Origin: Auanema rhodensis | Taxonomy: Eukaryota > Animalia > Nematoda | NCBI GenBank assembly: GCA_964057225.1 | Contig: OZ059898.1 | Location: forward strand, 5,084,001 to 5,148,000 | Length of the DNA: 64,000 bases | Direction: 5' to 3' | Notes under the pieces: generated by a model | Seen by the model: only the letters and a program-made list of their open reading frames with translations | Told to the model about the DNA's origin: nothing | The model's database searches: none | In this document: piece after piece, positions 13,391 to 14,024 of the stretch | How the letters are laid out: each line of letters starts with the position of its first letter | How positions within the stretch are numbered: the first letter of the stretch is position 1 | Made by a program: the position numbers and the translations under genes

Positions 13391-14024
13391 CTAAAAATTT
13401 GTTTCGTCATTTGATGATGAATTCCCCGTTGGACACCAAACATCTTTCTGAAATACGACTGGCCCCATAGGTGATTCATGAATTCCACCATATTCTTCAG
13501 GCTTTTTTTTCCAGCTTATCCTGTATATTGATGGAGGATCTATAATCAGAATCTAAAACAAAAAATATTTTTTTAAAAGCAATACTTTCTGGCTCATTGT
13601 CTTCAATAAGAATTGTTTGTTGTGCATTTGATGGAATATTCATATCTTCTGAGCTATTATTTTCATTTTGCTCTAGAATTGATTTCAAATGTTGAATGTA
13701 CTTCATTGCGTGCCGTAACGTATCCACCTTAAATGTGATAAAGTTGTATAAAGAATGTTTTTTGATTACCTTTGAAAGTTTCTTATCGCAGTTTCCAGAT
13801 GGTAGCCTTCCTCTTAAGCTATTAAATCCTTGATTAATGCTGGAAAAAAAGTATAATGACTTAATAAGAGAAGAAAAAAACCTATTCATTCGTTTGCGTT
13901 CTCGTTCATTTGCTGCCTGCCTCTGTTTTCCTGTAACTTTCTGTTTGGGATGTCTTCTGTCATACGCTTGATCGTATACCATTGTTGGATATATATTGAA
14001 GTTTGGAGAAAAATCGAAGTCCAT
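13391..14024 (-). CDS. PTF1a/Fer-like class II bHLH transcription factor, 167 aa, 4 exons (14024-13882, 13839-13770, 13727-13586, 13539-13391)
   Basis: [46 protein letters not shown] resembles the PTF1a bHLH ([32 protein letters not shown]). Last exon encodes YRISW and DVWCP. Exon lengths sum to 504 nt. Subfamily assignment is by eye. Confidence 0.8.

What the first reader, a model, noticed from the sequence alone, without database searches (positions are those of the whole stretch)
13391..13585. Nematode PTF1a-like bHLH retains both C-terminal Trp motifs used to bind CSL/RBPJ
Seen: the provided ORF track misses the true C-terminus. Using donor 13585 and the TATAG acceptor at 13540 (46-nt intron), the last exon reads NPPSIYRISWKKKPEEYGGIHESPMGPVVFQKDVWCPTGNSSSNDETNF*. 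Established: vertebrate PTF1a and fly Fer1 bind RBPJ/Su(H) independently of Notch through C1 (HSLSW) and C2 (VWTP, a hydrophobic-W-x-P motif like the Notch RAM). YRISW and VWCP match in order and nature. Inference: a PTF1-J-type trimer (bHLH + HLH-2/E-protein + LAG-1) may exist in nematodes; I am not aware of it being characterised. A TTTTAG 13 nt upstream would give a 33-nt intron and a frameshifted tail lacking both motifs.
Basis: partly seen in the sequence, partly recalled or inferred. Interest (0 to 1): 0.7.

Follow-up and report, generated by a model that had tools for sequence, protein, structure and literature searches.

The report
Nematode PTF1a gene keeps CSL-docking tail
A small four-exon gene in this worm encodes a PTF1a/Fer1-type transcription factor whose RNA-confirmed last exon carries the two tryptophan motifs that vertebrate PTF1a uses to dock onto the Notch-pathway protein CSL, a tail kept in most nematode lineages but not found in any Caenorhabditis protein.

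Summary
Spliced RNA contigs from four runs of one study join 13586 to 13539, removing a 46-nt GT..AG intron on the minus strand. No contig uses the alternative TTTTAG acceptor. The last exon encodes ...IYRISW...(24 aa)...DVWCP....

This tail is the best-conserved part of the protein: 62-71% identity to most strongylid orthologues. Its two Trp and the Pro are invariant in 20 aligned chromadorean nematode orthologues (clades III, IV, V); Trichuris (clade I) carries both motifs too. A tail-only profile comparison with non-nematode PTF1a tails gives P 2.4e-6, with three collinear elements. The Dictyocaulus orthologue has the same four-exon layout.

There are caveats. The window's bHLH alone scores equally as PTF or achaete-scute, and bHLH-only trees are unresolved. 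The PTF1a assignment rests on the tail and on clearer orthologues. No Caenorhabditis or Pristionchus protein with this tail appeared in two large searches. C. elegans HLH-13 has a Fer2-type bHLH signature, so it is probably a paralogue.

Binding to LAG-1/CSL and a PTF1-type trimer are inferred, not shown. I rate this a new member of a known kind, of moderate interest.

The parts
14028..14029 (-). Probable SL trans-splice acceptor (ttttAG|atcATG) 3 nt upstream of the start codon
   Evidence: Sequence. All full contigs stop at 14033 with one mismatch in the last bases, as expected if a spliced-leader 3' end (..TTTGAG, from my memory of SL1) is laid on the genomic ..TTTTAG. Inferred, not proven.
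13882..14024 (-). Exon 1: ATG at 14024, N-terminus and basic region (..[15 protein letters not shown], then a split Ser codon)
   Evidence: Translation. The RNA contigs cover 13882-14033. The N-terminus and basic region align to strongylid orthologues from residue 2.
13840..13881 (-). Intron 1, 42 nt, GT..AG
   Evidence: Joint 13839/13882 in contigs of 4 runs.
13770..13839 (-). Exon 2: helix 1 and loop ([23 protein letters not shown])
   Evidence: Pfam HLH match.
13728..13769 (-). Intron 2, 42 nt, GT..AG
   Evidence: Joint reported as 13725/13768 with cut +2 in 4 runs. The sequence reading places GT at 13769-13768 and AG at 13729-13728.
13586..13727 (-). Exon 3: helix 2 ([18 protein letters not shown]) and linker
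   Evidence: Pfam HLH.
13599..13616 (-). TILIED: hydrophobic element aligning with KILINN of strongylids and KKVII(C) of PTF1a. It is the first of three collinear post-bHLH elements.
   Evidence: alignment columns; hhalign columns.
13540..13585 (-). Intron 3, 46 nt, GT..(tat)AG: the junction in question
   Evidence: Joint 13539/13586 in contigs of X1, X2, X3 and X4.
13391..13539 (-). Exon 4 coding part (tail), stop TAG at 13393-13391
   Evidence: It is the best-conserved exon: 62-71% identity over 34 aa to most strongylid orthologues (range 53-71%), E about 1e-16.
13511..13525 (-). C1-like motif YRISW (Trp codon 13513-13511)
   Evidence: The Trp is invariant in 20 aligned orthologues. It aligns with HSLSW of PTF1a.
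13430..13441 (-). C2-like motif VWCP (phi-W-x-P; Trp codon 13438-13436)
   Evidence: Trp and Pro are invariant. It aligns with AKVWTPEDP of PTF1a.
13287..13390 (-). 3' UTR, with AATAAA at 13326-13321
   Evidence: The X1 contig runs to 13287; sequence.
13471..13514 (+). 44-nt GT..AG intron on the opposite strand (aggtgatt...ttttttttccag), used by one low-depth contig: a possible antisense transcript across exon 4, intron 3 and exon 3
   Evidence: X2 record 4 (131 nt, depth 3) covers 13441-13468 and 13513-13615 unspliced for the minus-strand intron. Seen in one run only.

Best explanation
The locus is an expressed four-exon gene (about 167 codons by exon arithmetic; the joined protein was not built). 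It encodes the PTF1a/Fer1-type bHLH factor of a rhabditid (clade V) nematode. Its last exon, reached through a 46-nt intron, encodes a short tail with three linear elements inherited from the bilaterian PTF1a ancestor: a hydrophobic strand (TILIED), a C1-type x-x-I-S-W motif, and, 25 residues later, a C2-type phi-W-x-P motif (VWCP). [quoted passage not shown] The Trp motifs would dock on the beta-trefoil domain of the CSL protein (LAG-1), at the pocket used by the Notch RAM WxP motif. The result would be a Notch-independent activating trimer. Shown here: gene model, expression, splicing, conservation, and homology of the tail. Inferred: heterodimerisation, LAG-1 binding and trimer function. 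The gene appears to be missing from Caenorhabditis. Its single PTFb gene, hlh-13, has a Fer2-type bHLH signature and is probably a paralogue.
For: Splicing and expression: (4 runs, all three introns removed).

Orthologues with the same tail occur in Strongylida, Heterorhabditis, Mesorhabditis, Ascaridida, Oxyurida, Steinernema, Panagrolaimidae, Acrobeloides and Trichuris.

The two Trp and the Pro are invariant. The tail is the most conserved exon. The Dictyocaulus locus has the same exon breaks.

Tail-only hhalign of nematode against non-nematode PTF1a tails gives probability 88.9%, P 2.4e-6, over 50 columns with all three elements collinear.

In the exhaustive profile search, 57 of 137 new top representatives carry HSLSW plus phi-W-x-P after the bHLH, and all eight non-nematode ones looked up are called PTF1a by their sources (the other two are nematode proteins).

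bHLH profiles built from non-nematode sequences class every chromadorean orthologue as PTF rather than ASC or atonal. Examples (PTF/ASC/atonal bits): Toxocara 100/69/74, Enterobius 105/72/74, Heterorhabditis 98/80/82.

C2 is kept even where the C1 Trp was lost (Strongyloides, filarioids), as expected if C2 is the main CSL contact.

Literature: Ptf1a W298A loses Rbpj binding and phenocopies the null (PMC9545688). RBPJ cofactors use a WxP motif (PMC8508133).

HLH-13's bHLH is Fer2-like ([21 protein letters not shown]; Simionato 2007 supplement). Its highest identity is to the Fer2-type P0222, and it pairs with P0222 in one tree.
Against: No binding data exist for any nematode.

The window's own bHLH is ambiguous. 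Summed exon scores are PTF 53, ASC 52 and atonal 46 bits. In bHLH-only trees the achaete-scute clade attaches next to it on a long stem, and AU tests reject neither placement.

A nematode-only tail HMM does not reach significance on non-nematode PTF1a (E 0.2-5), although those rank first among non-nematode hits.

The Trp-Trp spacing is longer than elsewhere: 25 residues against 18-22.

The residue after Trp is Cys here.

An AU test does not reject HLH-13 grouping with the tail-bearing genes (p 0.09), so HLH-13 could still be a tail-less orthologue.

The full-length HLH-13 sequence could not be obtained.
Confidence: 0.6

Rival explanations
1. The gene is a true PTF1a-family orthologue, but in nematodes the conserved tail serves another partner or purpose (a different cofactor, a degron, localisation), and no complex with LAG-1 forms.
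For: Nothing here tests binding. Sequence between the motifs is nematode-specific and strongly conserved (PE.YG.IH..P.GPVV.QKDVW in clade V), which suggests an interface beyond two short motifs. The Trp spacing differs from other phyla. The C1 Trp was lost twice. The only genetic test linking a nematode PTF-family gene to LAG-1 was negative, though for hlh-13 in ADF (PMC8289040).
Against: The phi-W-x-P element is invariant from Trichuris to clade V and matches the WxP class of CSL ligands (PMC8508133). Conservation of the same three elements, in the same order, from vertebrates to nematodes is most simply explained by a conserved partner.
Confidence: 0.25
2. The gene is the direct orthologue of C. 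elegans hlh-13. Caenorhabditis kept the gene but lost the tail and remodelled the bHLH, so there is one PTFb lineage in nematodes rather than two.
For: The AU test does not reject a clade of HLH-13 plus the chromadorean tail-bearing genes (p 0.09). C. elegans has a single PTFb gene. Hobert-lab papers treat hlh-13 as the sole PTF1a/NATO3 orthologue in C. elegans and P. pacificus. I found no species shown to hold both genes; no search seeded with HLH-13 was possible.
Against: HLH-13 lacks the derived features shared by all chromadorean tail-bearing genes, including the earlier-branching Mesorhabditis, ascarids and Steinernema ([25 protein letters not shown]). It keeps Fer2-type states instead (ELR, [21 protein letters not shown]). 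It sits with the PTF1a/Fer2/Trichuris group, with highest identity to a Fer2-type protein.
Confidence: 0.25
3. The gene is an achaete-scute-related bHLH that gained Trp motifs by convergence. The likeness to PTF1a is superficial.
For: The window's helix 1 ([13 protein letters not shown]) resembles nematode ASC-like proteins (VNQGFNQLRLRVP). Exons 2 and 3 score higher with the ASC profile. The ASC clade attaches beside the window row in two trees. ASCL5-like proteins score as high as PTF1a-like ones against the strongylid profile.
Against: ASC nested inside one clade V lineage is impossible as history and carries a 2.6-substitution stem, which points to long-branch attachment. All orthologues class as PTF, by up to 30 bits. 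They carry [11 protein letters not shown], the LPYEK loop and VDTL, not the ASC states. Tail homology has P 2.4e-6. Trichuris bridges with a canonical PTF1a bHLH plus the tail.
Confidence: 0.05

Closest known systems
Vertebrate PTF1A (p48), bHLH subunit of the PTF1 trimer with an E protein and RBPJ or RBPJL
   Same: Group A bHLH followed by three collinear elements: KKVII(C) matching TILIED, HSLSW matching YRISW, and AKVWTPEDP matching KDVWCP. The Trp of the second motif (W298 in mouse) is required for Rbpj binding (PMC9545688).
   Different: The nematode protein is about half the size, with no long N-terminal region. Its bHLH is much diverged. The Trp-Trp spacing is 25 residues rather than 18. 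It has no EDPR after the WxP. Nematodes, as far as I know, have no RBPJL paralogue. Binding is untested.
Arthropod and other invertebrate PTF1a/Fer1 (for example Anopheles P0217, sea urchin P0196, mites P0210 and P0315, Bulinus P0203)
   Same: Same family by profile search. The same tail motifs follow the bHLH.
   Different: These keep a near-canonical bHLH ([22 protein letters not shown]). Chromadorean nematodes have a derived one ([17 protein letters not shown]..LP).
C. elegans HLH-13 (called the PTF1a/NATO3 orthologue; terminal selector of RIC neurons)
   Same: It belongs to the same PTFb family of group A bHLH and is a small protein.
   Different: Its bHLH has the Fer2-type signature ([21 protein letters not shown]). 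No Caenorhabditis protein with the Trp tail appeared. It is probably a paralogue, though orthology with tail loss is not excluded.
RAM region of Notch receptors (LIN-12, GLP-1, Notch1-4) and other WxP cofactors of CSL (KyoT2/FHL1, RITA)
   Same: A short linear phi-W-x-P motif in a tail that, being a run of short linear motifs, is probably unstructured (not tested here). RBPJ binds cofactors with a WxP motif (PMC8508133).
   Different: There is no sequence homology beyond the motif, and a PDB search with the tail found nothing. This is likeness of mechanism, not family membership.
Achaete-scute family bHLH (nematode ASC-like P0070 and P0091, ASCL5-like)
   Same: Helix 1 and part of helix 2 of the window protein score slightly better with an ASC profile.
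   Different: ASC proteins lack AAN in the basic region, RM.SIN, the LPYEK loop and the whole Trp tail.

Membership tests
PTF1a/Fer1 (PTFb family of group A bHLH) | bHLH domain of PTF type (R.[26 protein letters not shown]..A..YI) | tested here: inconclusive
   Pfam HLH 5.9e-12. The window's exons sum to PTF 53, ASC 52 and atonal 46 bits. All orthologues class as PTF by 5-33 bits. bHLH-only trees are unresolved, and AU tests reject neither PTF nor ASC placement.
PTF1a/Fer1 (PTFb family of group A bHLH) | C1 motif: x-x-phi-S-W downstream of the bHLH | tested here: met
   YRISW at 13525-13511. The Trp is invariant in 20 aligned orthologues. It aligns to HSLSW in hhalign.
PTF1a/Fer1 (PTFb family of group A bHLH) | C2 motif: phi-W-x-P about 18-25 residues after C1 | tested here: met
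   VWCP at 13441-13430. Trp and Pro are invariant. It aligns to AKVWTP.
PTF1a/Fer1 (PTFb family of group A bHLH) | Homology of the whole post-bHLH region, independent of the bHLH | tested here: met
   hhalign of A3 (20 nematode tails) against A4 (30 non-nematode PTF1a tails): probability 88.9%, P 2.4e-6. A single-family HMM was not significant on its own.
PTF1a/Fer1 (PTFb family of group A bHLH) | Heterodimer with a class A E protein on an E-box | not testable with these tools
   No multimer prediction or binding assay is available.
PTF1-type trimer (bHLH + E protein + CSL) | Trp-dependent binding of the tail to the CSL beta-trefoil domain | not testable with these tools
   Structure prediction folds single chains only. 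No LAG-1 sequence of this organism was in hand.
PTF1-type trimer (bHLH + E protein + CSL) | Composite E-box plus TC-box (CSL) target sites, including autoregulatory ones near the gene | tested here: not met
   In 12000-17000 there is one CATATGGGAA (14766-14775), where the E-box and CSL core overlap rather than being spaced by one or two helical turns. This is a weak test of one locus only.
hlh-13 orthology group (Fer2-type PTFb) | Fer2-type signature: ELR, [21 protein letters not shown] | tested here: not met
   The window has SLR, [15 protein letters not shown] and HAMKYI. HLH-13 has the Fer2 states. HLH-13 does not group with the window in the trees, but the AU p of 0.09 does not exclude it.
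Achaete-scute family | Basic region RRNERERNRV..VN and VETL in helix 2, with no Trp tail | tested here: not met
   The window has [12 protein letters not shown](S)IN and VDTL plus the tail. Only helix 1 (NQGF..LR) is ASC-like.

The most novel reading that the evidence does not exclude
Nematodes ancestrally had two PTFb genes. One is a PTF1a/Fer1-type gene whose Trp tail recruits LAG-1/CSL into a Notch-independent activator complex. It is kept from Trichuris to strongylids and in this species, but was lost in the Caenorhabditis (and perhaps Pristionchus) lineage. The other is the Fer2-type hlh-13. If so, the gene that C. elegans work calls the 'PTF1a orthologue' is not the CSL-binding one. A Notch-independent use of LAG-1 by a bHLH would then exist in most nematodes yet be invisible in the model species.
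Probability: 0.4. Interest if true: 0.6.

Novelty: new member of a known kind. Interest (0 to 1): 0.45.

Why it matters
PTF1a is the textbook case of a bHLH factor that uses the Notch effector CSL without Notch. If the docking tail works in nematodes, the bHLH/E-protein/CSL trimer dates back at least to the protostome-deuterostome ancestor and persists in a phylum where it has never been studied.

The finding also corrects an orthology habit. C. elegans HLH-13 looks like the Fer2-type relative, and the tail-bearing PTF1a-type gene appears absent from Caenorhabditis. Tests of 'LAG-1 with the PTF1a orthologue' in C. elegans (PMC8289040) could therefore not have found the complex.

Tractable species that keep the gene, such as Steinernema hermaphroditum, Heterorhabditis, Mesorhabditis and Panagrolaimus, would make the question testable.

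On the practical side, the tail lies on its own small exon. It is missed or frameshifted in several database gene models (P0004, P0013, P0016 and many arthropod models).

Tried and rejected
1. I took P0081 for HLH-13 from memory and spent the last word search on it. It is LIN-32/atonal. The true HLH-13 bHLH came from the supplement of Simionato 2007. Full-length HLH-13 could not be obtained with the remaining tools.

2. bHLH-only ML trees do not resolve PTF from ASC for the chromadorean genes. The AU tests are all non-significant.

3. A nematode-only tail HMM against non-nematode proteins was not significant. The profile-profile test was.

4. A PDB sequence search with the tail found no hit.

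5. A scan for composite E-box/CSL sites around the gene found nothing convincing.

6. The ESM Atlas look-alikes of the Fer2-type protein were uninformative about nematodes.

7. Beres 2006, Masui 2007 and Liachko 2009 are not held. The definitions of C1 and C2 and the Fer1-Su(H) claim therefore rest on my memory and on secondary citations.

8. The species was not identified. The runs are coded, and earlier notes did not name it.

9. The 'intron-retaining' contig of X2 is better read as an antisense spliced RNA, not as an isoform lacking the tail.

10. Exons were used by reference. For the trees, the unspliced ORF was used, once with intron-coded residues masked by X.

11. One 60-residue HLH-13 bHLH string copied was typed into scripts.

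Full report
**Anatomy and observation.** The finding lies on the minus strand. Reading 12800-15200 and translating the pieces gives a four-exon gene:
- Exon 1, 14024-13882: MDFDF...[15 protein letters not shown] plus a split Ser codon.
- Intron 1, 42 nt.
- Exon 2, 13839-13770: [23 protein letters not shown].
- Intron 2, 42 nt.
- Exon 3, 13727-13586: [18 protein letters not shown]...TILIEDNEPE plus one base.
- Intron 3, 46 nt, 13585-13540.
- Exon 4, 13539-13391: (N)PPSIYRISWKKKPEEYGGIHESPMGPVVFQKDVWCPTGNSSSNDETNF*.

The first two introns are multiples of three without stops. The mechanical ORF 13497-14024 (175 aa) therefore reads straight through them and through intron 3 into a false C-terminus. 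This explains why an ORF track misses the real one. The alternative TTTTAG acceptor would give the same false tail.

**RNA evidence.** The look-up of sequencing runs found four runs of one study that hold the stretch. Laid on 13200-14200, their contigs remove all three introns at the predicted GT..AG sites. The joint 13539/13586 is present in all four runs.
- No contig uses the 33-nt alternative.
- The contigs end at 14033 with one mismatch, just upstream of ttttAG|atcATG. This fits a trans-spliced leader (inference).
- One low-depth X2 contig leaves intron 3 in place and skips 13471-13514. That stretch is a perfect GT..AG intron with a poly-T tract on the + strand. I read it as an antisense transcript, not an alternative isoform.

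**Relatives.** A word search with the unspliced ORF, given by reference, found small strongylid bHLH proteins. Their C-termini read ...LYMVSWRRTPEKYGEIHETPRGPVVYQKDVWMPGTK.
- A profile of these found orthologues in Heterorhabditis, Mesorhabditis, ascarids, oxyurids, Steinernema, Panagrolaimus, Acrobeloides, Strongyloides and filarioids. The ascarid entries are named 'Pancreas transcription factor 1 subunit alpha' by UniProt. The search also found PTF1a-like proteins of a mite, a bryozoan and a barnacle.
- Exon 4 is the best-conserved exon: 62-71% identity over 34 residues to most strongylid orthologues, against 44-61% for exon 1.
- In a 20-sequence alignment, the two Trp and the Pro of W-x-P are invariant outside the bHLH. 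The same holds for 20 nematode tails alone.
- Strongyloides and the filarioids have lost the first Trp but keep KVW.P.
- The Dictyocaulus locus has exon breaks at the same three places, with the tail on its own exon.

**Is the tail the PTF1a tail?** The exhaustive profile search returned 98 representatives below 1e-30.
- 57 of the 137 new ones carry HSLSW and phi-W-x-P after the bHLH.
- All eight non-nematode ones I looked up are called PTF1a by their sources: sea urchin, Bulinus, mites, Anopheles and a damselfly. The same look-up named Trichuris muris (canonical PTF1a bHLH plus HCLTW...LWIP), Mesorhabditis belari and Panagrellus.
- P0212 and P0309 look like vertebrate PTF1A.
- A nematode-only tail HMM ranks PTF1a-like proteins first among non-nematode proteins, but without significance.
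- A tail-only profile-profile comparison, with the bHLH excluded from both sides, gives probability 88.9% and P 2.4e-6 over 50 columns. It aligns l-I-N-N with KKVII, ISW with SLSW, and sKVWiP with AKVWTPEDP.

I take the tail as homologous to the C1/C2 region.

**Is the bHLH of PTF type?** Here the evidence is weaker.
- ML trees on 68 bHLH columns place the window with Nippostrongylus and Dictyocaulus. They leave the chromadorean genes unresolved.
- The achaete-scute clade attaches on a 2.6-substitution stem next to the window row. That cannot be real history.
- AU tests reject neither a PTF clade without ASC (p 0.46) nor chromadorean plus ASC (p 0.20).
- Profiles built only from non-nematode named sequences class every chromadorean orthologue as PTF (PTF/ASC/atonal bits): Toxocara 100/69/74, Enterobius 105/72/74, Heterorhabditis 98/80/82, Nippostrongylus 84/80/75.
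- The window's three exons sum to PTF 53, ASC 52 and atonal 46.

The assignment of the window gene therefore runs through its orthologues and its tail, not through its own bHLH.

**HLH-13.** From memory I mistook LIN-32 for HLH-13 and wasted a search.
- The real HLH-13 bHLH is in the supplement of Simionato et al. 2007 (PMC1828162)...[48 protein letters not shown]. It is assigned to family PTFb, and C. elegans has one PTFb gene and no PTFa gene.
- It shares ELR, PTFPYEK, KIDTL and LAIAYI with Drosophila Fer2 and its Daphnia, Lottia and Capitella counterparts in the same files. The tail-bearing nematode genes instead have LPYEK/KVDTL as in Fer1/PTF1a.
- In the trees, HLH-13 sits with PTF1a, Fer2 and Trichuris. 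Its highest identity (64%) is to the Fer2-type P0222.
- No Caenorhabditis, Pristionchus or Diploscapter protein with the tail was among the best 120 or the best 150. Those genera are in the databases.
- The derived bHLH features are shared by Mesorhabditis, ascarids and Steinernema but not by HLH-13.

I therefore favour two nematode PTFb lineages, with the PTF1a-type one lost in Caenorhabditis. An AU test does not exclude the alternative (p 0.09), and I could not show both genes in one genome.

**Mechanism.** Established knowledge:
- Ptf1a W298A loses Rbpj binding and phenocopies the null (PMC9545688).
- RBPJ binds cofactors through a WxP motif (PMC8508133).
- From memory of Beres et al. 2006 (not held): P48 binds RBP-J/L through two Trp motifs that occupy the Notch docking site.

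Inference: the nematode protein pairs with HLH-2 and docks its VWCP, helped by YRISW, on LAG-1. C2 is invariant even where C1 is lost, which fits C2 being the main contact. A scan of 12000-17000 found no spaced E-box/CSL composite.

**Literature and novelty.** Only PMC8289040 holds both 'hlh-13' and 'lag-1'. It asked whether LAG-1 works with HLH-13 in ADF neurons and found no requirement. Aguilar et al. 2025 (PMC11703107) and a 2026 preprint treat hlh-13 as the sole PTF1a/NATO3 orthologue and do not mention LAG-1. Database names already call the ascarid proteins PTF1a. The gene family is therefore not new. What seems undescribed is the conserved CSL-docking tail across Nematoda and its absence from Caenorhabditis.

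**Limits.**
- The species is not identified. It is a clade V rhabditid by similarity.
- The RNA comes from one study.
- Binding is untested.

Noticed in passing
window 13441-13615, + strand (intron 13471-13514): One 131-nt contig of run X2 (depth 3) is spliced on the opposite strand at a perfect GT..ttttttttccAG 44-nt intron. It runs unspliced across the gene's intron 3. This may be an antisense transcript over the tail exon.
   Followed up: partly
window 13497-14024, - strand: Introns 1 and 2 are both 42 nt, in frame and free of stops, so a 175-aa ORF reads through the whole gene and hides its exon structure.
   Followed up: yes
proteins P0032, P0033, P0035 (Strongyloides) and P0036, P0037, P0225 (filarioids): These orthologues have lost the first Trp (filarioids read ..ELSC..) but keep KVW.P at the C-terminus. 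That makes two independent losses of C1 with C2 retained.
   Followed up: partly
proteins P0004, P0013, P0016 and about 80 of the 137 new representatives: Many database gene models of this family end in junk or stop before the tail. The tail exon is probably often missed or frameshifted by gene predictors.
   Followed up: partly
protein P0222 (Fer2-type, arthropod-like): This Fer2-type protein has its own conserved-looking Trp element after the bHLH (..TARLSWINWENLG..). The model also contains an internal duplication of the bHLH, probably an assembly or annotation artefact.
   Followed up: no
window 14766-14775: CATATGGGAA: an E-box overlapping a CSL core (TGGGAA), about 740 nt upstream of the start codon. 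It is the only CSL-like core within 3 kb upstream, and the spacing is not that of a PTF1 composite site.
   Followed up: partly
window 46622-47191 (-) and 22384-22854 (+): Neighbouring ORFs match Pfam T-box (5.2e-15) and the end of the MOR2-PAG1_N cell-morphogenesis domain (1.1e-6).
   Followed up: no
L001 10906-11037: In the Dictyocaulus locus, a weak second match to the basic region and helix 1 (34% over 43 aa, E 0.14) lies about 1.6 kb downstream of the gene. It was not examined.
   Followed up: no
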